The notes: generated from the sequence alone by a model not told the origin. A stretch of DNA of 64,000 nt from Diplonema japonicum (GCA_964019335.1 OZ025726.1:393703-457702), one strand, 5' to 3'. Positions 7,629 to 64,000 are shown, counted from the first letter of the stretch. Numbers and translations are program-made.

Positions 7629-8442
7629 TTTTTTTTGTGTTATTGTTGGCCCCCCCACCCTTTTTTTTTTGCAACGCGGGTTTTAAGAATGAGGAAAAAA
7701 AAAAAAAAAGGGATGAACATGGAACAAATCACACAGGCACATCATCCCCCACACCAGAGCACCCACACCAGCAGATTTTGTTCTCCGTAACACTTTCCGA
7801 CGGGGGGGGGGGGGGGTGCATCTTTTCTTTTTTTGTTTCTTCGTTTTTTTTTTCTCTTTCTTTCCTTTCTTTCCAAGGTAAGGGTGCTTAATATTAAAAA
7901 ATAATGTATTTTTTTGAGTTCTCCCCCCCCCCTCCCATCATAATGTTGCACTCACCCCAGTTGTGTGTTTCTTCACTTTTTTTTTTTCCTTCTTCCGTCC
8001 TTCCTTATTTCGTTATTTATTCATTCTTTCATCATTTTCTTTCTTGCTGGTTCAGTGGTGTGGCGGAGGTAACCCCATACTGGGTGAAAATAAAAAGAGG
8101 GACTTTTTTTTGTGGCACCAAAAAAAGGGGGGGGGGGAAGAGAGGGAAGGTTTTTTTTTTTTTTTTTGTGGAGCAAGAATATATTTCTTTTTTTTTCTTC
8201 TTCTATCTTCTTTCTTATTTGGGTAGTCTTAAAAACCTCTTCTCAAAAAAATCAAAGGAGGGGGATGGGGAAAAAAAAAAAAATCGTTGGTTAATTTTGC
8301 AGAGTATCTGGAGCCAAAAAAAAAAAGAAAACAAAAAGCGTTAAGAGCGCAAGGAGTTTGGGGATGGGAACAACACTTTAAAAAAAAAAGTTCCACAAAA
8401 AAGGGAGATGCCGGGGCTCTAAAAGAAAAAAGTGTGGGTGGG

Positions 8443-8487
<45 letters not shown>

Positions 8488-8734
8488 AGGAAAAAAAAAA
8501 TCACGTTGAATGGAAGGTGGTGAGGGGAAGGGGGATGAAGAATAAAGGAAAGACCGCGAAGAACGCCGAAGAAAGAAATCCTCCCCCTTCCCACACCCTG
8601 ACCCTTATAAATCTAAAAGAAAAAAAAAATTAAAAATGCGGGGGTTGGTCTGTCTTTACCAAGACATTGATACTTCAGTTCTCTCTCCCTGTCTCTTTTT
8701 TTTTTCTTTTTTTTCGTTCTTAATCTCCTTCACT

Positions 8735-8989
8735 TCACTTCTCGTGAGGCTCGTATTTGATGCTGGTGTTTGAGCCAAGCTGGGGTGGGAAATTAGAAAA
8801 AAATTAAAAAAAAAAATTACAAAATACCTGAAGAAGTGTGAGAAGCCTCTGCTTCAACTCTTCGAGGGCATCGCCTTGCGTCTTGTCGCGTGTCCACACT
8901 GAAATTTTGGTTTGGGCCTTTCGTCGCCCGAGTGCCGCACCAGTGACGTGCCCTTCAGCGATGGGTGCTACACCATCTTCCACGTATTC

Positions 8990-56144: not shown

Positions 56145-56434
56145 TTAAAGAGAACGAGGTAGAGTCTTACCTGGAATGTACAATCCTTTTCCAAACATCT
56201 TCTGTCCTAACTTCTTCCCTCCATGAGCCGCTAGAGCACTCAGACCTGCAACAATAGGTGCCAGGAATTGCAAGAAGCCACCCTGCTTCCTCATGTGCAA
56301 GAGTTGTGTTTTTGAGAGCTTCAACATCACACTAGTCTTTGAATTTACTGCTTTCATCAACTTGTTCTTTTGAGTCATTGTGATAGCTAGCTTATCACTC
56401 CCTGCCATTGAGGGATCAATCTTAAGGGTAACAC
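56145..56434 (-). pseudogene. 5'-truncated Polinton/adenovirus pX-like core protein
   Basis: VTLKID...GSDKLAITMTQKNKLMKA...LKLSKTQL...KQGG|FLQFLAPIVAGLSALA: a GG cleavage-like site followed by an amphipathic GGFL peptide. The 5' end is replaced by the insertion starting at 56435. Confidence 0.7.
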
Positions 56435-56507
56435 GGGGGACAAAATCCAACTCACAGCCTTCACGTGGCGTCCCCTGTAAGTAAGCTTCGGCTGAAACTA
56501 ATGTGAG
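56435..56507 (+). ncRNA. HDV-like self-cleaving ribozyme
   Basis: P1 GGGGGAC(56435-41)/GTCCCCT(56470-76) with G.U at the cleavage site; P2 CTCACA(56451-56)/TGTGAG(56502-07); P3 GCC/GGC closing the 7-nt L3 TTCACGT; P4 AGC-TTCG-GCT; J4/2 CTAA with putative catalytic C56498. Confidence 0.88.
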
Positions 56508-56714
56508 AGGTACCCAAGCTGTGGTGTGTGTGTGTGTGTGTGCGAACCTTGCCGGGGCTAGATTTAGAGCGGGCCCTGTTACCCATTCGCCCTGTCCTTG
56601 GTAAGCCTTGATGGTCGGAGGGGGTAAGGTAGCTGGTGTGTGCGTGGTTCCCCCCTGTGCTGTGTATCCGCTTTCGTTGTGACCGTTGCTGAATACGAAG
56701 TAGAAAAAAAAAAA
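56435..56714 (+). mobile_element. Short ribozyme-headed retroposon (SINE/SIDER-like) with (GT)n tract and A-tail
   Basis: Begins exactly at the ribozyme cleavage site, interrupts the pX-like gene, and ends in an A11 run at 56704-56714. No TSD identified. Confidence 0.6.
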
Positions 56715-56864
56715 GTAAACAAAACAAAAAAAAGAAAGCAACAACAAAAAAATGAAAAGAGGTTTTTTTTTAATTCAAAGTATCTTTTTGTTTTTGATGT
56801 TGGCAGGCACTAAAACAACCTTCATACGCTAACCACATCAAAATCAAAATCTATATCTTGGACT

Positions 56865-56911
56865 AAAAAAAAACCAACGATTCTAAAAAAAAACCAACGA
56901 TTCTAAAAAAA
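56865..56911 (+). repeat. Tandem reiteration of the SL 5' end (20-bp unit A7-AACCAACGATTCT)
   Basis: aaaaaaaaaccaacgattct occurs three times in exact tandem; the third copy continues into the full SL exon. Confidence 0.95.
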
Positions 56912-56950
56912 AACCAACGATTCTAAAGCTACAGTTTCTGTACTTTATTG
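56912..56950 (+). ncRNA. Complete 39-nt spliced-leader (mini-exon) sequence, diplonemid type
   Basis: AACCAACGATTCTAAAGCTACAGTTTCTGTACTTTATTG: 39 nt, with the conserved euglenozoan CAGTTTCTGTACTTTATTG 3' half and the AACCAACGAT 5' end recalled for Diplonema. Followed by GTCGTT rather than GTAT, and no obvious Sm site, so probably not an intact SL RNA gene. Confidence 0.92.
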
Positions 56951-57118
56951 GTCGTTCGTGTTCTGCTGGTGCCTGCCGCCTCTGCCTGGGTTTGCCGCTG
57001 CGTCCGTCGTCCGTCGTCGCCGTCGTCCGGGGGGGTTGTTTTGCCCGTCGGCCTGCCCGCCGCTCAACGAAAGGATCCCCTCCCCCCCATCACACACTAT
57101 AAAACAAAAAAAAAAAAA

Positions 57119-58194
57119 ATGGATCCAAGACGACTCGCAGGAGGAGGTGACCGCAGCCGCAGCCCGCAGGAGCAAGCCCGCAGCCCGCAGTGCACGGCAC
57201 CGAGACCCACCCAACCAGGCAATCTGGTTGGGCAGTATGAATCCCCACCCCCTAGATCCCCCCACCCCCCTTTAGAAAAAAAAAATAATAAAAAAAAAAA
57301 TCACAAGTAGAGACCGCGGTTTTGACCGCCACAACCAAGGGAGCAGCAGCCCCTGCTACAGCCACGGCCGCCCCGGCCGCAAGCACGACTGCTGCAGCAG
57401 CCCCAGCCGCACTGAACGCCGCAGCCGACCCTGCCGCCCCAAACGCCGCAGCCGCCCCTGCCGCAGCCACGACCGACACAACCACGATCGCCGCAGCCGC
57501 CCCTGCCGCCTTGAACGCTGCAGCCGCCCCTGCCGCAACTGAGACAGCCGCAGCCGCCCCTGCCGCAAGCCCGACCTCCGCAGCCGACCCTGCCATAGTT
57601 GAAGAGGAAAAAAAAAAGAAGAAAAAGGGGGAAGGGTGTATACTGAAAGATGGTGAGCACCCCCCCGGGTTGAAGACAGGTGCTGCCCCCGCCTTCCCAG
57701 AAGCTCTGCTGTCCGGGAAGTGGGAGGCCCTGTCAGGGAACACGGGGAGGGAGACGCTCCAGCATGGGCACCGGTGGGAGGGGACGGACGCCGAGGTGCG
57801 CCCCACCACCGGCATCCCAGGGGAGGCAAAGGGGTGGGTGAGGGAGGTGGCCGCCGCCGCAGGGCTCAAGGTGGTCCCCAACCAGGTACTTGTGAATAAG
57901 TACAGACCTGGTTGTGGGATTGCCGCCCACAAGGACGACGCAAGACTGGGACCGGTCGTCCTAGTCTTGTCGTACGGGGCTGAGACCACAATGGTCATGA
58001 GGAAGGGGGACAGGGTAGCGAGGTACCTGGTGCCCCCCTTCTCATGGGCACTGTTGGAAGGCGAAGCGAGACACCAGTGGACACACCACATCCCGTCAGG
58101 GGTGTCCACTGGTGTCAGGGTGTCGATCACCCTGCGTGCGGTTGGCCCCGAGCTCACCCACATACCCCCCCAGGAAGACCCACCCCTGGGCTAA
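57119..58194 (+). CDS. AlkB-family 2OG-Fe(II) dioxygenase with Ala/Pro-rich linker (probable start 57119 via a frameshift in the A-run at 57290-57300)
   Basis: PNQVLVNKYRPGCGIAAHKD (HxD), LSYG, LEGEARHQWTHHI (distal H), RVSITLR (RxSxTxR): a complete metal/2OG ligand set. Confidence 0.88.
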
Positions 58195-59873
58195 CAAACG
58201 AACCCCCCCCTTTTTTTTTAGAACCCTCCACGGAGGTAAAAAACAGACCCTCTTCGGAGGAAAATGGAGAGAGAGGGGAAGAGGCAGCGCTCCCAAAAGA
58301 GGGTAGTGTTCCTCCCCCCCATTTGTCCCCCCCTTTTTCATTTTTAGAGCCCTCTTTGGAGGAACCCTCCACGGAAAACAGACCCTCTTCGGAGGAAAAT
58401 AGAGAGAGAGGGGAAGAGGTGGCACCCCCGAGAGAGGGTAGTGTTCCTCCCCCCCATTTGTCCCCCCCTTTTTCATTTTTAGAGCCCTCCCCAGAGGGAC
58501 CCTCCACGGAGGTGAAAAACAGACCCTCTTCGGAGGAAAAAAAGGCAGAGGGAGAGACAGCACGCCCGAGAGAAGGTAGTGCTCCTCCCTCTCTGCCCCA
58601 TTTTTTCTGGACCCTCTACGGAGGTGTACACCCTGGTCCCCAAGGGCCGGGGGCTTTTTTTGAGGGTGGAAGGGAAAGAAAAAAAAAAACAAACAAGGAG
58701 GAACCTTTTTTCTTTTCAAACAACCAGGGGGACCCAGCACCCGCCCCCACCGCCTGCCAAGGTGTGGTTGGGGCGGAGGCTGCGAGCGACGTGAGAGCAC
58801 CACTGCACACCCTTGTGAGAAGACAGAAAAGAGCCCCCTGGATTGCCATGGGTGGCAGGGAACCTAAGCCAGCGCCCAAGAGGAAGAAGAACAGGAGGAG
58901 GCACAGGAGCGAAACGGCCCTTCAGAGGCGTCGGGAGAAGAGGACCAAGGCGAGGGAGGCTGCCAGACAGGAGAAGAAAAGGCACCGTCGTGCGAGGAAA
59001 GAAGGGAGGAGGAGGGCCCGCAGAGAGGAACACGAGGCCGCCCTGGAACAGAAGCCAGATGACCCTGCAATGGGGCTGAAGCTGACCGAGGTGGGAACGC
59101 CTGGAGCCCAACCCCTGGCACCCAGAATCCCGGCACCTGGGGCTGCAACCGGTGCAAGGAGGCACCGCAGACGGACGGGACACAGCAAGGAAGGGATGAG
59201 ATGGGAGCACCTGGGGGTGTGGGCCTGGGTCGCCCTGTTCTCCCTCTTGCTGATCCCAGGGGTGAGGCAGGTGCTGGGGGCGGGCATCGGGATGGCCCCC
59301 TCCTTCCTGCATGCTGCAGTGTTGTGGAAGAGGCCGGGGAGCGACAGGAGGACCACCCGCAGGTCAAGGGTACAGGTGGGGCCCCGAGGGGATGAATGGT
59401 CCGCCGGGGAGCTCGCTTGGCTAGCGGTAGGAGGCACCCTGGTGGGAAGCACTTCAGTTTGGATAGGGGGGCTGATGTCGCTCTGGGCCATGTCGGAAGT
59501 GATGGTGGGGAAAGCTGGTGCTGGCCCGACCCAGAGATTCGGACCGGTAAAGCTGAAGAAGACAAGACGCGGATCGAGAGGTCACTACCTGCCGGTGTAC
59601 TTGGGCCCGCCTAGAAGCTCAAGACGCAGAAAAAAGAAGGTGGACGCCAAGCAAGCGGCGAAGGAACGAGCTGAGACGGAGGATAAGCTCTTTCAGGCCG
59701 AACACCTGGACCCCTTTGCGGACTTGACGCTGGCAGGGGACGCGTTGCAAGGAGGTGGTGACCCTCCCCCCATGGATTTGGATGATGAGCACATGGAGGC
59801 GCAGAAGGAGGGGGAAAAAGAAGGATCAGACAAACATCAATGCCGGATGGAAGCAAACTGGTGTTTTACATGA
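58044..59873 (+). CDS. Retroelement middle ORF: repeats, Arg-rich basic tract, two hydrophobic segments
   Basis: 609-codon open frame between AlkB and the RT-thumb ORF, overlapping both; probably parts of one frameshifted polyprotein. Confidence 0.55.
   Translation: MGTVGRRSETPVDTPHPVRGVHWCQGVDHPACGWPRAHPHTPPGRPTPGLTNEPPPFFLEPSTEVKNRPSSEENGERGEEAALPKEGSVPPPHLSPPFSFLEPSLEEPSTENRPSSEENRERGEEVAPPREGSVPPPHLSPPFSFLEPSPEGPSTEVKNRPSSEEKKAEGETARPREGSAPPSLPHFFWTLYGGVHPGPQGPGAFFEGGRERKKKTNKEEPFFFSNNQGDPAPAPTACQGVVGAEAASDVRAPLHTLVRRQKRAPWIAMGGREPKPAPKRKKNRRRHRSETALQRRREKRTKAREAARQEKKRHRRARKEGRRRARREEHEAALEQKPDDPAMGLKLTEVGTPGAQPLAPRIPAPGAATGARRHRRRTGHSKEGMRWEHLGVWAWVALFSLLLIPGVRQVLGAGIGMAPSFLHAAVLWKRPGSDRRTTRRSRVQVGPRGDEWSAGELAWLAVGGTLVGSTSVWIGGLMSLWAMSEVMVGKAGAGPTQRFGPVKLKKTRRGSRGHYLPVYLGPPRSSRRRKKKVDAKQAAKERAETEDKLFQAEHLDPFADLTLAGDALQGGGDPPPMDLDDEHMEAQKEGEKEGSDKHQCRMEANWCFT
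58215..58625 (+). repeat. Three-plus tandem ~135-141-bp repeats within the retroelement
   Basis: cagaccctcttcggaggaaaa at 58244, 58379 and 58520; gagggtagtgttcctccccc recurs. Confidence 0.9.
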
Positions 59874-62800
59874 GAGTGGTCCCAGACTCGCATGTGGGAG
59901 GGGTCATGCACAGGTTCGACGAGATGGTGCGGAAGACGATGTCGAAGGTGTGCGGCATGCAGTTCGAGAACGGGTCGAAAGAATGGCAGCAGGCGAAACT
60001 GTCCGTAAAAGTCGGTGGGCTTGGGATGAGGAGCTGCCAGGAGCACCTGCGCGCGGCCAACATGGCTTCGGCGTCGACGATGAAGCTGTGCAAGGAGCTG
60101 GATCCCAAATACGAACATGGGCTGGAAGGGGGTGTATGGGGGAGCTGGCTCGAGTGGTTCAACAGGACGAAGGGCGGCATGCAGATTACACCCGACATGG
60201 TGGCCAAGGCCCCCCACATCTGCAGCCAGAGGTGGCTCTCTAGGGTGCTTGATGAGAAGGCGCTGGAGGACCTCTTGGCGAAAGCAGATGCACGCTCGAG
60301 AGCGAGGTTGATGTCGGAGTCAATGCACTATGCGGGAGCGTGGTTGACGGCGACGCCTGACTTCTACAACCAGCTGTCGGACAACGAGTTTGGGGCTCTG
60401 ATCAAGTGGTGGTTGGGGGCTCCGGTCTACAAGCAGGGTGAGAGCTGCCACGACCCGAGGTGCAAGACTGAGGGGATGGACGTATGGGGTGACCATGCCC
60501 AGGGATGCGGCAACGCCAGGATTGCGAGGCACGACCGGGTGAAGGAGACCATCCACAGACACTGTCAGTGGGCCGGGGTGAGCGCAACGATGGAGAAGAC
60601 GGGGCTGATCCCGGGGTCGTCCCAGCGCCCGGCGGACGTGTTCTTCCCAGGTGGGGTGGGGGGTTCCCGCCCAATGGCTATGGACGTGGTCATCGTGCAC
60701 CCGAGGAACGAGTCTTGTGTCAACCAGGCGGCGAAGACTGCGGGGTACGCAGCGGCGAAGGCGGAACACTACAAGCGCCAGAAGTATGAGGCGGAGCTCG
60801 CCAAGACACGCGTGGCCTTTGTACCTTTCGCGATGGAGACCTTTGGGGGGTTCGGGGAGGCAGCAGTCTACCTCACGAAGAAACTGTCCAGGAGCATAGC
60901 TGCGCGGGCTCACGGGGACAGAGTCTCGATACACAGGCGTGTGGTCCAAGAGGTGTCAACGGCCATGATGAGATCGATAGCAGGGGCGCTGTTAGTCAAA
61001 GGGCCTGTACAGTTGGATCCAGGGCCCCCGGTACCGGACGGCGAAGAGGAAAAAAAGGACAACGAGGAAGCGAACAACGAACCCAACACTGAATCCAACA
61101 CTGACCTCACAGAGGACTCCTTCGGCAATGAAAAAACCACCGAAGCTGAGGAGTCGTCCGAGAGGGAAGTGAAGGGACAGGGAGGCGGACCCCCAATCAC
61201 GGTGGCCCACCAGCTGGATGCCCTTCTGGAGCAGACGAAGAAGGACCTGGACGCCCGAATGCAGCAGCAGCGAAAGGCGGAACCGGTGGAGGGTGGAACA
61301 CAAGGGAAAGCGGGAGCAGGACTCGAAGCAGCCTCGCCGGGAGGAGAAGACACGGAGATGGTCGGAACAGGATCCAGCGAGAGGGCTGGGCAGGGAGGGG
61401 AGCTTGACCCGAAGGCCCAGGAAGATGGGAAGAGACAAGGGGCGACTGACGCTGCGGTGAACCAGACCTTGGACCAGTGTCCTAAGGGGGATACGGAGGC
61501 CCAGAGGGACTCGAACAAGGGGGACCAGAGTGCGACAACTGCTACGAGGAAGATGACCGTGAGCGAATTCTGTAGGGAACAAGCTGCGAAGAGACAGGGC
61601 GGTGGGAGGACTCTGAAGCCGCAGGCGGATGACGCCCCCGAAGGGACCAAAGAGGGCGGGAACGCACCGAGCGGAGGCAGCCAGTCGGGGCCTGACACAC
61701 CTAGGGGTGGGATCCAGACGCCGGAGGGAGATCAGCTGATGGGAGTCGGGGCACCGGAAAGGGAACAGCAGGTGGAAGTAGGGGGAGACTTCGTTCAGCT
61801 TGACCCGATTGATGTGGTGATGGGCATCCCAATTCCGAGAGCGATGGTGCCACTGAGGGCGAGGCCGGGGGACCGACTGCTCAAGTTCATCATCCAGTTC
61901 GAGGGCCGGGTGGAGATCATCCTTGAAGAAGGAACGGACCCTGGAAGGGAGAGGACTGAGGAGATGCTTCTTGCGAAGGCCGAGTCGCTGGGTGTTCCAC
62001 TGGAGGTGGCTATGGCTGGCCAGATTGGTATCGCTGGACTTGGATACATGATGGTAAAGCAGTACTTCGCAAGCTTGGAAGGTGGGTCGGACGGAGAGCG
62101 CCGCAGCCGCATTGTGGGTTGTGAGGTGCAGAAGTCGGAAACATACCGCGAGTTCGAGTTCCCGAGGACGGTCCAGGATTTCCAGATCACGTACGCGTGT
62201 GGGTGTTCGGCGGTGCAACCTGTTCGTTTCAAGGGTGGCGTGCTCAAGGGGACTCTGGAAACGGCATGGGGGGTGGTCAAGTTGCAGACCCGGGGGTGCA
62301 GACACCACCCGACACTGGGGAAGGAAGGGGTAGTGGGCATTGCGGCGGGAGCCGGCGCTACCAAGGTGACACTACGTGAGTTCTTGGAGAGGTGCGACGC
62401 AAGGATAAGGGCCCCAGTGGGAAAGGTCAAGGACCTGATCAAAGTGAAGGCGTGGGTGAGGGATGGAAGGAAGGTCACCCTCGACGTCTACGAGGGGAGG
62501 GGGCCCTGCGAGAAGGAGACGAGGCGCACTGTCCAGGACCATCTGCGGAAGATGGGTGTTGAAGAGGTCGACCTGCAGTCAGCGGTGGTGACGGTCCCGG
62601 GGTTGTTCGAGGACGTCTCCTTTGAGAGGTACCTTGGGCTGTTGGCCCGGAAGAAGGAGGAAGACAGGGAGAGGCGGCCTGAGGTGGTTGCCACGGACCT
62701 CCCCACCCTGGAAGAGCTGAAGTGGAGCAAGAAGGACAAGAAGCGGGCCCGGGCCCGATCGGCCAGTACTGACTCGGATTGTGTGGAGGGTGGCTACATC

Positions 62801-63082
62801 TATCTGAAGGGTACGGGGGCGGATGGCACCGTGGTCGAAGCCAACATATGCAGGGGTGAGCTCAAGGGGATGACCGGGCCCCAGTTCAAGTTCTTGGCGG
62901 AGCACAGGTTGATGGAAGAGCTGGGGAGCGACGACCTGGTGCGGGACACGGTCAAGGTGCGCAACAAGGAGAACTGGGCCCCGGTGAACAGTGCGGTGGC
63001 TTGGCTGCAGCTCGAGTCGGGGAGGGCACGGGTGGGGCCCATACCCCACAAGAAGAGGTCCAAAGGCTCGCTGGCCAGATAG
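59840..63082 (+). CDS. CRE-clade RT thumb / CCHC zinc knuckle / restriction-like endonuclease plus ~690-aa C-terminal extension; RT catalytic core absent
   Basis: KLVFYMR..P, WQQAKLSVKVGGLG, AGAWLTATP, CHDPRC...DVWGDHAQGC, RHD, RPAD, DVVIVHP, AEHYKRQKY, FVPFAMETFG; no QGDPLGP or YxDD anywhere upstream. Confidence 0.88.
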   Translation: MPDGSKLVFYMRVVPDSHVGGVMHRFDEMVRKTMSKVCGMQFENGSKEWQQAKLSVKVGGLGMRSCQEHLRAANMASASTMKLCKELDPKYEHGLEGGVWGSWLEWFNRTKGGMQITPDMVAKAPHICSQRWLSRVLDEKALEDLLAKADARSRARLMSESMHYAGAWLTATPDFYNQLSDNEFGALIKWWLGAPVYKQGESCHDPRCKTEGMDVWGDHAQGCGNARIARHDRVKETIHRHCQWAGVSATMEKTGLIPGSSQRPADVFFPGGVGGSRPMAMDVVIVHPRNESCVNQAAKTAGYAAAKAEHYKRQKYEAELAKTRVAFVPFAMETFGGFGEAAVYLTKKLSRSIAARAHGDRVSIHRRVVQEVSTAMMRSIAGALLVKGPVQLDPGPPVPDGEEEKKDNEEANNEPNTESNTDLTEDSFGNEKTTEAEESSEREVKGQGGGPPITVAHQLDALLEQTKKDLDARMQQQRKAEPVEGGTQGKAGAGLEAASPGGEDTEMVGTGSSERAGQGGELDPKAQEDGKRQGATDAAVNQTLDQCPKGDTEAQRDSNKGDQSATTATRKMTVSEFCREQAAKRQGGGRTLKPQADDAPEGTKEGGNAPSGGSQSGPDTPRGGIQTPEGDQLMGVGAPEREQQVEVGGDFVQLDPIDVVMGIPIPRAMVPLRARPGDRLLKFIIQFEGRVEIILEEGTDPGRERTEEMLLAKAESLGVPLEVAMAGQIGIAGLGYMMVKQYFASLEGGSDGERRSRIVGCEVQKSETYREFEFPRTVQDFQITYACGCSAVQPVRFKGGVLKGTLETAWGVVKLQTRGCRHHPTLGKEGVVGIAAGAGATKVTLREFLERCDARIRAPVGKVKDLIKVKAWVRDGRKVTLDVYEGRGPCEKETRRTVQDHLRKMGVEEVDLQSAVVTVPGLFEDVSFERYLGLLARKKEEDRERRPEVVATDLPTLEELKWSKKDKKRARARSASTDSDCVEGGYIYLKGTGADGTVVEANICRGELKGMTGPQFKFLAEHRLMEELGSDDLVRDTVKVRNKENWAPVNSAVAWLQLESGRARVGPIPHKKRSKGSLAR

Positions 63083-63717
63083 GCCAGCGGGGGTGTGGGG
63101 GGCTGTTCTCCCCCGCCATAGGAAGATGTGAAACTTTTTTTTTTTTTCTGAGAAAAAAAAAAAAGGGAAAAATAAAAGAATAGGGAACAGGTGCTACAAC
63201 GGCCAGGCTAGATAGAACCACTTAGATTTTTTTTTTTTTTTTCCTTTTTTTTTTTCTTTTTGTTTTTCCTTTTTTTTTTTTTTTTTTTTATTTTTCTGTT
63301 TTTCTTTTTCTTTTTCTTTTTGAAGTGGAACCATCTCGGTCGACGTTTTTTTTTTTCTTTTTTCTTTTGTGGTGATGTGTTTTTCCTGTTTTTGATTTTC
63401 TTCTTCCCCCGCTCTATGCTTTTTCGCATGGACATTGGCCACTCTGCCCCTTTCCCCTTTTTTGATTCTCCCTCTTTCCCCCTCCTAAATTTTACCCCCT
63501 GCCCCACTCATTCCTCCCTAGTATGTTTTTGAATTTGCCTCTTCTTCTTTTAAGCCTTTTTTGAGATTTTTATTTTTGAATTTTTATCATTTGGAGTTGC
63601 TTCTTCTTCTTCCCCTCTCCCTCCCATAAAGAAAAAGAGAAACCCATGCCTTCCTCCCAGGTTGGAACTTGATTGTCTGTTTTGGAATATTTTTATTTTC
63701 TCTTAAGATTTATCGTG

Positions 63718-64000
63718 CCCGCAAACCCGCAAACCCGCAAACCCGCAAACCCGCAAACCCGCAAACCCGCAAACCCGCAAACCCGCAAACCCGCAAACCC
63801 GCAAACCCGCAAACCCGCAAACCCGCAAACCCGCAAACCCGCAAACCCGCAAACCCGCAAACCCGCAAACCCGCAAACCCGCAAACCCGCAAACCCGCAA
63901 ACCCGCAAACCCGCAAACCCGCAAACCCGCAAACCCGCAAACCCGCAAACCCGCAAACCCGCAAACCCGCAAACCCGCAAACCCGCAAACCCGCAAACCC
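63718..64000. repeat. Perfect (CCCGCAAA)n tandem array, ~35 units, running off the window
   Basis: Directly visible 8-bp period. Confidence 0.97.

What the first reader, a model, noticed from the sequence alone, without database searches (positions are those of the whole stretch)
56861..56960. Retroelement capped by a full spliced leader whose 5' end is reiterated, as if by telomerase-like RT slippage
Seen: a full-length 39-nt SL exon sits directly 5' of a CRE-clade retroelement, preceded by two extra exact copies of A7+SL nt 1-13. Known: CRE/SLACS/CZAR elements target SL genes in trypanosomatids, and SL is added to mRNAs by trans-splicing. Inference: this copy was reverse-transcribed from a trans-spliced element RNA right to the cap. 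The cDNA end (…GGTT plus extra Ts) could then re-anneal to the AAA at SL nt 14-16 and recopy nt 13-1, twice, which yields exactly the observed 20-bp unit. Alternative: the element inserted just after the exon of an SL RNA gene and uses its promoter and cap.
Basis: partly seen in the sequence, partly recalled or inferred. Interest (0 to 1): 0.9.

Follow-up and report, generated by a model that had tools for sequence, protein, structure and literature searches.

The report
Spliced-leader-headed telomeric retroelement, stuttered 5' junction
A defective copy of a chromosome-end retroelement that starts with the cell's own 39-base spliced leader was joined to an older element inside a run of A's, and a polymerase slip at that joint, not telomerase-like recopying of the leader, best explains the three exact 20-base repeats.

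Summary
Window 56863-56927 is a perfect 20-bp x 3.2 array, followed by a full 39-nt spliced leader (SL, 56912-56950) fused to a GC-rich retroelement. This pattern occurs nowhere else in the genome.

The SL is not part of an SL RNA gene. True SL genes lie beside 5S rRNA and have a different upstream region and intron.

About 40 copies of this element family ('type A') all begin with the SL at nt 2-3, behind unrelated flanks. That fits cDNA copies of SL-bearing RNA.

The window copy has lost its OTU and RT domains. A full-length relative on the same contig encodes AlkB, OTU, RT and a REL endonuclease. Copies sit at contig ends with the 3' end outward, capped by (CCCGCAAA)n.

The telomerase-like model is not supported as stated. 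The 'CT + A-run' in each unit belongs to the upstream unit ('U'), which reads ...ggaCT-A10-CACCC in 8 paralogs. Each repeat unit therefore spans the U/SL joint and is bounded by the 5-nt homology CTAAA.

Partial SL copies precede 8 of 37 type-A 5' ends, so I favour polymerase slip-back or template switching while the 5' joint formed. Later replication slippage is the main rival.

First-stage notes on other windows of this genome had already flagged the same SL/AlkB/telomere-like system.

The parts
56435..56871 (+). 5' fragment (about nt 1-437) of another repeated unit, 'U'. It ends in its own CT + A-run, where the SL element is joined.
   Evidence: Paralogs at 9 or more contig-end regions start at 56435. 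Eight read ...cttggaCT-A10-CACCCACTCTTCGG. The left boundary coincides with the predicted cleavage site of a sub-threshold HDV-like (CPEB3) ribozyme hit at 56424-56499, 23.2 bits, E 0.013.
56863..56927 (+). Perfect 20-bp tandem array: three units of CT-A9-CCAACGATT plus a terminal CTAAA. Each unit spans the U/SL joint.
   Evidence: TRF period 20, 3.2 copies, 100% matches. Unique in the genome. Bounded by the 5-nt direct repeat CTAAA (U: ggaCTAAA; SL nt 12-16) by direct reading.
56912..56950 (+). Full 39-nt spliced leader sequence forming the 5' end of the element.
   Evidence: Exact match, identical to the exon of the true SL RNA genes. It differs at 2 nt from the Diplonema SL listed in PMC3795323.
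56951..57118 (+). Type-A 5' UTR. Segment 56951-57073 begins GT and ends AG.
   Evidence: 94-100% identical in 41 genomic copies, all preceded by the SL. One copy (L024, C57:509284) has the SL joined directly at the equivalent of 57074.
57640..58140 (+). AlkB-like 2OG-Fe(II) oxygenase domain.
   Evidence: Pfam PF13532, E 1.5e-14. 65% identical to the AlkB ORF of the full-length type-B element.
58221..58589 (+). 135-bp internal tandem repeat (2.7 copies) inside the N-terminal part of the large ORF.
   Evidence: TRF.
58985..59852 (+). Site of the internal deletion that removed the OTU protease and reverse transcriptase domains.
   Evidence: tblastn of the type-B ORF: aa 160-380 map to 58305-58985 and aa 1396-1845 map to 59852-61192. 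aa 380-1395 (OTU 612-697, RVT_1 1116-1326) have no counterpart. No RT by Pfam.
59840..63082 (+). 1080-aa ORF: post-RT thumb (GGLG at 60014), CCHC + REL endonuclease motif (60446-60685), and a long C-terminal region of unknown function.
   Evidence: Motif C-x4-C-x10-H-x3-C-x6-RHD-x19-E-x10-RPAD-x15-D. Aligns with RT-REL proteins, whose profile best matches R2 proteins in the PDB, E 4e-34. Over 25 paralogs are 100% identical over aa 5-420, in open frames up to 2967 aa.
63083..63719 (+). 3' UTR, cut 17 nt before the family's poly(A) site.
   Evidence: 97% identical to the 3' end of a type-A copy at the other end of the contig, which continues ...ccttgtgtgtcttttgaag + A17.
63718..64000 (+). (CCCGCAAA)x35 running to the end of the contig; a telomere-like cap.
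   Evidence: TRF 35.4 copies, 100% matches. The window end is the contig end. The same repeat with the same polarity lies at 11 of 11 contig termini held.

Best explanation
What it is. The locus is the 5' joint of an RT-deleted, non-autonomous copy of a chromosome-end non-LTR retroelement family. Full-length members encode AlkB, an OTU protease, RT and a REL endonuclease. The family's RNA carries the organism's 39-nt spliced leader at its 5' end.

Copying and joining. The RNA was reverse-transcribed to about SL nt 2-3. The cDNA end was then joined to a 5' fragment of another retro-unit (U), inside U's own A10 tract, through A:T microhomology. This step is inferred. It is consistent with the oligo-A found in front of the SL in many sister copies.

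The repeats. The sequence just left of the joint (ggaCTAAA...) repeats SL nt 12-16 (CTAAA) 20 nt further on. The polymerase forming or copying the joint slipped back twice between these two CTAAA sites, or switched back and forth between the U template and the SL template. That produced three exact units of CT-A9-CCAACGATT.

Which polymerase. It could be the element's RT during first-strand synthesis or template jumping, or a DNA polymerase during second-strand synthesis. The sequence cannot tell them apart.

Shown: the anatomy, that the A-run is native to U, that the flanks are not an SL gene, and that partial SL copies are frequent at sister 5' joints. Inferred: the timing (at integration) and the enzyme.
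For: (1) The unit spans the joint. U paralogs read cttggaCT-A10-CACCC, so CT and the A-run are flank. The array is 3 units + CTAAA.

(2) The process is joint-specific. 8 of 37 distinct type-A full-SL sites have partial or complete SL copies directly upstream: C102, C113, C108, C35, C101, C9, C11 and this one. In contrast, 41 copies align over the next 160 nt with only small indels and no duplication of 15 nt or more.

(3) Partial copies that run past SL nt 39 continue into element sequence (gtcg..., gtcgttcgtgttct), not into the SL RNA intron. The re-copied template was therefore SL-led element RNA or cDNA.

(4) The C102 joint TCT-AAA-CC uses the same AAA (nt 14-16) microhomology.

(5) Extra A's (5-9 in all) precede CCAACG in many type-B and type-C copies with unrelated flanks. 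This fits T-tailing of the cDNA before joining.

(6) The family RT-REL profile is closest to R2 proteins. R2 RT is documented to perform untemplated addition and template jumping (PMC8857657).

(7) The joint's k-mers are present in contigs of three independent studies.
Against: With only one locus and no marker mutation inside the units, integration-time slipping cannot be separated from later replication slippage.

In two other reiterated loci (C102, C113) the repeated blocks share private errors. At least part of such arrays was therefore re-copied from DNA or cDNA, not repeatedly from RNA.

A homopolymer plus a 5-nt direct repeat is a classic replication-slippage substrate.

Type-B ends show 0 of 10 reiterations.

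The unit number has not been verified in raw long reads.
Confidence: 0.55

Rival explanations
1. Post-integration DNA event. An ordinary single joint (U ...ggaCT-A9 | SL nt 3-39) expanded from 1 to 3 units by replication slippage or unequal sister-chromatid exchange between the two CTAAA repeats 20 bp apart. This would be unrelated to reverse transcription.
For: The array is exactly 3 units + CTAAA with identical A-runs, as slippage between 5-nt direct repeats gives. The unit includes flank DNA. Block re-copying with shared errors is seen at C102 and C113. An A9 homopolymer promotes slippage.
Against: It needs two successive events at a young locus; the units are 100% identical and the element is 99-100% identical to its sisters. 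Comparable duplications are concentrated at SL 5' joints (8 of 37) and absent from the adjacent 160 nt of 41 copies. That points to a joint-linked process.
Confidence: 0.3
2. After copying SL nt 1, the RT added untemplated T's. These re-annealed to AAA at SL nt 14-16 of the SL RNA or element RNA, and nt 13-1 were recopied. This happened twice, in a telomerase-like manner.
For: Sister copies show extra A's in front of the SL. One locus (C102) has partial SL copies joined exactly at AAA (nt 14-16). R2-type RTs add untemplated nucleotides and jump templates (PMC8857657).
Against: CT + A-run is the native sequence of the upstream unit in 8 paralogs. The leftmost 'A7' is therefore flank. The two inner A-runs would have to match it in length by chance, and three identical untemplated tails are unlikely. 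The unit is not fully specified by the SL RNA, so one defining trait of telomerase-like copying is missing.
Confidence: 0.07
3. The element inserted just downstream of the exon of a genuine SL RNA gene and uses that gene's promoter and cap. On this view the reiteration is part of the SL gene repeat.
For: A different family in this genome does start with SL exon plus SL intron (C2:150556, L084). SL-gene-derived 5' ends therefore exist here.
Against: True SL genes have upstream ...ggagaaagaggtccgggaggtt and intron gtacccaatctgatcc, are tandem at about 350 bp, and lie beside 5S rRNA. The window has neither flank. Its upstream is the U unit and its downstream is the type-A UTR shared by 41 copies.
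Confidence: 0.01
4. Assembly artefact: the extra units were created by mis-assembly or polishing in a low-complexity stretch.
For: Homopolymer-rich short tandem arrays are error-prone. A 2-nt deletion variant at 56885 appears in some contigs.
Against: K-mers of the unit-to-unit joint, which is unique to this locus, are present in contigs from three independent studies of the organism.
Confidence: 0.03

Closest known systems
MoTeR1/MoTeR2 (Magnaporthe oryzae) and FoTeR (Fusarium oxysporum) telomeric retrotransposons
   Same: RT followed by a REL endonuclease related to SLACS/CRE. Found only at chromosome ends. Head-to-tail arrays separated by short telomere-repeat tracts. Non-autonomous deletion derivatives sharing both ends. 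Truncated terminal copies capped by new telomere repeats. Sense strand continuous with the C-rich repeat strand. A variable reiterated 5' terminus. (PMC7367193, PMC12857005; here.)
   Different: MoTeR and FoTeR point their 5' ends at the chromosome terminus; these elements point their 3' ends outward. Their 5' terminus is the spliced leader rather than telomere-like hexamers. They carry AlkB and OTU domains. The terminal repeat here is (CCCGCAAA)n, with its C-rich strand running 5'->3' toward the end.
SLACS / CZAR / CRE1-2 (trypanosomatid SL-gene-specific retrotransposons)
   Same: RT + CCHC/REL architecture. The nearest named homologue is a Diplonema papillatum protein annotated 'SLACS 132 kDa protein' (43% identity). 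Both have an association with the spliced leader.
   Different: From established knowledge, SLACS, CZAR and CRE insert inside the SL exon of SL RNA genes. Here the complete SL sits at the element's own 5' end, far from SL genes, as part of the copied RNA.
Spliced-leader relics of retroposed genes in dinoflagellates (mRNA recycling)
   Same: Genomic SL copies at the 5' ends of retrocopies. Five sister copies show a full SL followed by the SL nt 24-39 relic, as expected from re-trans-splicing at the CAG inside an older relic (PMC6050394, PMC5585692 listed).
   Different: In the window the extra pieces are 5' parts of the SL lying upstream of the full SL. Repeated trans-splicing cannot make that arrangement. 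The carriers are retroelements, not host genes.
R2 reverse transcriptase untemplated addition and end-to-end template jumping
   Same: R2 gives the best solved-structure match to the family's RT-REL profile. Jumping after untemplated addition explains oligo-A before the SL, chimeric U-SL joints and partial 5' re-copies (PMC8857657).
   Different: No biochemistry exists for this RT. Here the re-copied stretches are very short (13-53 nt), and some were re-copied from DNA.
Drosophila HeT-A/TART/TAHRE telomeric arrays
   Same: Chromosome ends built of head-to-tail non-LTR elements in one orientation, with terminally eroded copies (own knowledge; PMC9723646 listed).
   Different: The Drosophila elements have their poly(A) ends toward the centromere and there are no simple terminal repeats. 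Here the orientation is opposite and a simple 8-mer repeat caps the ends.

Membership tests
REL-endonuclease non-LTR retrotransposons (CRE/SLACS/CZAR, R2, NeSL group) | Reverse transcriptase domain | tested here: not met
   The window copy has no RVT_1; it was lost by internal deletion. The family does have one: the full-length type-B relative L038 has RVT_1 at E 3.9e-19, and type-A paralogs lie in open frames up to 2967 aa.
REL-endonuclease non-LTR retrotransposons (CRE/SLACS/CZAR, R2, NeSL group) | CCHC + RHD/N...E...R/KPD...D/E endonuclease motif C-terminal to the RT | tested here: met
   Window aa 203-282 (nt 60446-60685) and type-B aa 1597-1674 match the pattern quoted in PMC12857005, with small spacing differences. 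The residues are conserved across 24 homologues. The profile's best PDB hits are R2 proteins, with two matched stretches.
CRE/SLACS/CZAR proper | Site-specific insertion within the SL exon of tandem SL RNA genes | tested here: not met
   The flanks are not SL gene sequence, and the SL is complete and lies at the element's 5' end.
CRE/SLACS/CZAR proper | Phylogenetic placement of the RT inside the CRE clade | not tested
   The only evidence is the nearest named hit ('SLACS 132 kDa', D. papillatum, 43% identity over 54% of the query). No reference RT set was available to build a tree.
Telomere-targeted REL retrotransposons (MoTeR/FoTeR type) | Copies confined to chromosome ends, in head-to-tail arrays separated by short telomere-repeat tracts | tested here: met
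   Nearly all type-A and type-B ORF hits lie within about 12 kb of contig ends. Joints such as poly(A)-(CCCGCAAA)2.6-SL and truncated element-CCCGCA-SL are present.
Telomere-targeted REL retrotransposons (MoTeR/FoTeR type) | 5' end toward the chromosome terminus | tested here: not met
   Copies are on the minus strand at left ends and the plus strand at right ends, so the 3' end faces outward. In the window, unique chromosome sequence lies on the 5' side and the contig end on the 3' side.
SL-relic retrocopies (dinoflagellate-type recycling) | Full SL followed by 3' SL relics truncated at an internal AG | tested here: not met
   In the window the extra pieces are SL nt 1-13 upstream of the full SL. 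The relic pattern (SL + nt 24-39) does occur in five other copies.
Telomerase-like reiterative copying | Repeat unit wholly specified by a short region of one RNA template, realigned after each round | tested here: not met
   The unit contains CT + 7 A's that are native to the upstream U unit and absent from the SL.
HDV-like-ribozyme-headed retroelements (for the upstream unit U) | Self-cleaving ribozyme fold at the exact 5' end | tested here: inconclusive
   CPEB3_ribozyme hit at 56424-56499, 23.2 bits against a gathering score of 35, E 0.013. The predicted cleavage site, 56435, equals the start of paralogy.

The most novel reading that the evidence does not exclude
Chromosome ends of this probable diplonemid are built and repaired by SL-headed retroelements attached 5'-end-first. 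Full-length, T-tailed cDNAs of capped SL RNAs would be captured by eroded chromosome 3' ends through A/T or AACC microhomology, and the chromosome end would prime second-strand synthesis. The new end would then be capped by an unprecedented telomere repeat, (CCCGCAAA)n, whose C-rich strand is the 3'-ended one. The stuttered SL joints would be the scars of this capture reaction.
Probability: 0.15. Interest if true: 0.9.

Novelty: new variant of a known kind. Interest (0 to 1): 0.6.

Why it matters
The 20-bp stutter is a small scar, but it marks an undescribed family. These are telomere-associated REL-type retroelements whose RNA carries the host spliced leader and whose copies record reverse transcription up to the cap-adjacent nucleotide.

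The family gives a natural read-out of three things: how a non-LTR RT behaves at a hypermodified capped 5' end (stop at nt 2-3, T-tailing, template switching), how 5' joints form, and how chromosome ends are rebuilt in a little-studied eukaryote lineage.

It also exposes a terminal repeat whose strand polarity contradicts the universal G-rich 3' strand rule. If that is confirmed in raw reads and at the bench, it would be the more important result.

Tried and rejected
(1) SL-less 'master' copy. Patterns requiring a non-G, or a non-T plus G, before GTCGTT... gave 0 hits. All 41 type-A 5' ends carry the SL. How the exact SL|GTCGTT joint is regenerated therefore stays open, because SL-bearing copies have no AG in front of it.

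(2) TTAGGG telomeres: none in the genome.

(3) RT in the window copy. Pfam, three-frame reading and tblastn against six RT loci and two further loci found none.

(4) PDB sequence search with the window ORF alone gave nothing. Only the family profile reached R2.

(5) Remainder of the U unit downstream of type-A copies, as a simple nested insertion would leave: not found in the window or C53.

The RT of type A is therefore inferred from open-frame lengths and from type B.

(7) Reads. Only k-mer contigs were available, with no raw reads and no run on record as RNA. Unit number, transcript 5' ends and expression could not be tested.

(8) Literature. No paper holds the 8-mer dimer. The D. papillatum genome paper mentions SLACS-like RTs but no SL-headed elements.

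(9) SL conservation (2 mismatches in 1369 nt) against the adjacent UTR (11 in 1620) is too weak a contrast among such young copies to decide between a refreshed and an inherited SL.

Full report
OBSERVATION

Window 56863-56927 is a perfect tandem array: period 20, 3.2 copies, 100% matches. Read directly, it is ggaCT, then A7 + SL nt 1-13 twice, a third A7, then the complete 39-nt spliced leader (SL) at 56912-56950, followed by GTCGTTCG... The sequence turns sharply GC-rich there, from about 42% to about 60%.

The SL occurs once in the window and about 207 times in the 62.5-Mb assembly. The unit-to-unit joint is unique to this locus.

Logan contigs from three independent studies of the same organism cover 56878-56911. 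A run with another organism label does not, and it carries the uninterrupted upstream sequence instead. The joint is therefore real. The unit number could not be checked, because only k-mer contigs were available.

NOT AN SL RNA GENE

Genuine SL RNA genes have these features:
- They are tandem at about 350 bp (C15, C59, C4, C51).
- Their upstream region reads ...ggagaaagaggtccgggaggtt.
- Their intron reads gtacccaatctgatcc....
- They lie next to a 5S rRNA gene.

Both SL-gene flanks also appear as high-depth loose ends in the read contigs. The window shares neither flank.

The SL differs at two positions from the Diplonema SL listed in PMC3795323. The nearest named protein homologue is from Diplonema papillatum. 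The organism is probably a diplonemid.

THE ELEMENT

Forty-one distinct genomic 5' ends share the window's 5' UTR at 94-100% identity ('type A'). Every one is preceded by the SL, behind unrelated flanks. Among the 37 ends whose SL aligns, SL nt 2 is A in 31. Nt 1 is effectively random (C11, A11, G9, T6). This fits cDNAs that end one or two nucleotides short of the cap.

The SL is also fused to other sequences:
- a related 'type B' UTR and at least two unrelated families;
- a 13-nt body plus poly(A);
- in one copy, the equivalent of window 57074, which follows a GT...AG segment (56951-57073);
- in five copies, a full SL followed by the SL nt 24-39 relic. This is the product expected if an older genomic SL is re-trans-spliced at its internal CAG, as in dinoflagellate SL relics.

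SL-bearing RNAs are therefore being reverse-transcribed into this genome on a large scale.

No SL-less type-A copy with an AG acceptor was found. The route that regenerates the exact SL|GTCGTT joint remains open.

CODING CAPACITY

The window copy has an AlkB-like domain (Pfam E 1.5e-14). It also has a 1080-aa ORF with a GGLG thumb region and a CCHC/RHD/E/RPAD/D REL-type motif, but no RT.

A full-length type-B element at the other end of the same contig (L038) has, in order:
- the SL;
- an AlkB ORF;
- an open frame of at least 2730 aa containing an OTU protease, RVT_1 (E 3.9e-19) and the same thumb-REL region.

Mapping type B onto the window shows that aa 380-1395, which include OTU and RT, are deleted. 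Type-A paralogs that are 100% identical over the thumb-REL region sit in open frames of up to 2967 aa.

Homologues of the RT-REL part are widespread. One is a D. papillatum protein annotated 'SLACS 132 kDa'. A profile built from them matches R2 proteins best among solved structures (E 4e-34).

CHROMOSOME-END CONTEXT

- Nearly all type-A and type-B copies lie within about 12 kb of contig ends. They are on the minus strand at left ends and the plus strand at right ends, so the 3' end points outward.
- The window copy stops 17 nt before the family's poly(A) site (native end + A17 in L038). It is capped by (CCCGCAAA)x35, which runs to the contig end.
- At C68 a type-A copy is cut inside its ORF and capped in the same way.
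- Between array members there are short tracts of the same repeat.
- Eleven of eleven contig termini held here show this repeat with the same polarity. No TTAGGG array exists in the genome.
- Proximal copies are 3'-truncated, and no remainder appears downstream.

This is the MoTeR/FoTeR picture (PMC7367193, PMC12857005) in mirror image.

THE UPSTREAM FLANK DECIDES THE MECHANISM

Window 56435-56871 is the 5' part of another repeated unit, 'U'. U's left boundary coincides with the predicted cleavage site of a sub-threshold HDV-like ribozyme hit.

Eight U paralogs read ...cttggaCT-A10-CACCCACTCTTCGG.... The 'CT' and the A-run of the window's repeat unit are therefore native U sequence, not RT-made. 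Type-A elements are joined to U at five different points in five paralogs, so these are independent joints.

The window joint lies inside U's A-run. The array equals three copies of that joint (CT-A9-CCAACGATT) plus CTAAA. It is bounded by a 5-nt direct repeat: U's ggaCTAAA and SL nt 12-16.

A model in which the SL RNA alone is recopied after untemplated T-addition does not explain two things: the presence of flank sequence in the unit, and three identical A-runs.

WHY A JOINT-LINKED SLIP IS FAVOURED

- Eight of 37 type-A full-SL sites carry partial or whole SL copies immediately upstream. Examples are SL3-16 + SL3-22 repeated twice (C102), SL3-23 twice (C113), SL3-39 + 4 or 14 nt of element (C108, C35), and SL5-30 (C9).
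- The next 160 nt of 41 copies show no duplication of 15 nt or more.
- Partial copies that extend beyond nt 39 continue into the element, not into the SL intron. The re-copied template was therefore element RNA or cDNA.
- At C102 the joint uses the same AAA (nt 14-16).
- Many type-B and type-C copies have 3-6 extra A's before the SL. This fits T-tailing before a template jump, as documented for R2 RT (PMC8857657).

Against a purely RNA-templated process: at C102 and C113 the repeated blocks share private errors, so blocks were re-copied from DNA or cDNA.

I therefore assign these probabilities:
- about 0.55 to a slip or template switch while the 5' joint was being formed (RT or second-strand polymerase);
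- about 0.30 to later replication slippage;
- about 0.01 to an SL-gene insertion;
- about 0.03 to an assembly artefact.

COMPARISON AND NOVELTY

The family works like MoTeR/FoTeR: REL-type, telomere-associated, arrayed, with non-autonomous derivatives. It differs in orientation, in using the spliced leader as its 5' terminus, in carrying AlkB and OTU, and in the terminal repeat.

It is not a CRE/SLACS/CZAR-type SL-gene inserter. It shares SL-relic recycling with dinoflagellate retrogenes, but the window's array cannot be made by that route.

First-stage notes on other windows of this genome had already flagged SL-headed, AlkB-carrying units next to the 8-mer repeat. Those notes are unchecked leads, and what is tested here agrees with them.

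Noticed in passing
window 63718-64000; also L041, L042, L052, L056, L076, L087, L067, L075, L055: The terminal repeat (CCCGCAAA)n lies at 11 of 11 contig termini held, always with the C-rich strand running 5'->3' toward the end. This is the reverse of the usual G-rich 3' strand. No TTAGGG arrays exist in the genome, and no paper holds the 8-mer dimer. The repeat caps truncated elements, as de novo telomere addition does.
   Followed up: partly
window 56424-56499: Sub-threshold HDV-like (CPEB3-type) ribozyme hit (23.2 bits, E 0.013). Its predicted cleavage site, 56435, is exactly where the repeated unit U begins in all paralogs. U is likely a ribozyme-headed retro-unit.
   Followed up: partly
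L084 (G000:C2:150300-160299), SL at about 258-297: A different retroelement family begins with SL exon plus SL RNA intron (gtacccaatc...), followed by a 2064-aa RT ORF, behind a non-SL-gene flank. Unspliced SL RNA sequence forms its 5' end.
   Followed up: partly
L038 (G000:C79:1-10000, minus strand): Full-length type-B element: SL, AlkB-like ORF (8061-8891), then an open frame of at least 2730 aa with an OTU cysteine protease (aa 612-697), RVT_1 (aa 1116-1326) and a REL motif (aa 1597-1674). It runs off the contig start.
   Followed up: yes
L021 (G000:C52:245850): A retrocopy consisting of the full SL + 13 nt + A19, apparently a tiny trans-spliced, polyadenylated RNA copied into DNA.
   Followed up: no
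L004, L007, L025, L051, L070: A full SL followed by SL nt 24-39 and then the element. This is the pattern expected from re-trans-splicing at the CAG inside an older genomic SL (dinoflagellate-like recycling).
   Followed up: partly
window 56951-57073; L024 (G000:C57:509284): The first 123 nt of the type-A UTR begin GT and end AG. One genomic copy has the SL joined directly after this segment, either by cis-splicing from the relic SL's donor site or by trans-splicing at that AG.
   Followed up: no
L001, L010, L014, L019, L023, L025 (upstream of type-B SLs): Short units of about 27 nt (ttctcaagtccccctttttatttat), some ending in A-runs, lie between the poly(A) of one element and the SL of the next. 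Their nature is unknown.
   Followed up: no
L008, L026 (G000:C15 and C59 right ends): True SL RNA gene repeats are adjacent to a 5S rRNA gene (Rfam 102.6 bits), within a few kb of contig ends.
   Followed up: partly
L055/L035 (G000:C102:315411-315513) and L052 (G000:C113): Other reiterated SL joints whose repeated blocks share private errors (loss of one A at SL nt 5-6; A20C). The blocks were duplicated from a DNA or cDNA template.
   Followed up: partly
window 58221-58589: A 135-bp tandem repeat (2.7 copies, 84% matches) inside the N-terminal coding region of the element.
   Followed up: no
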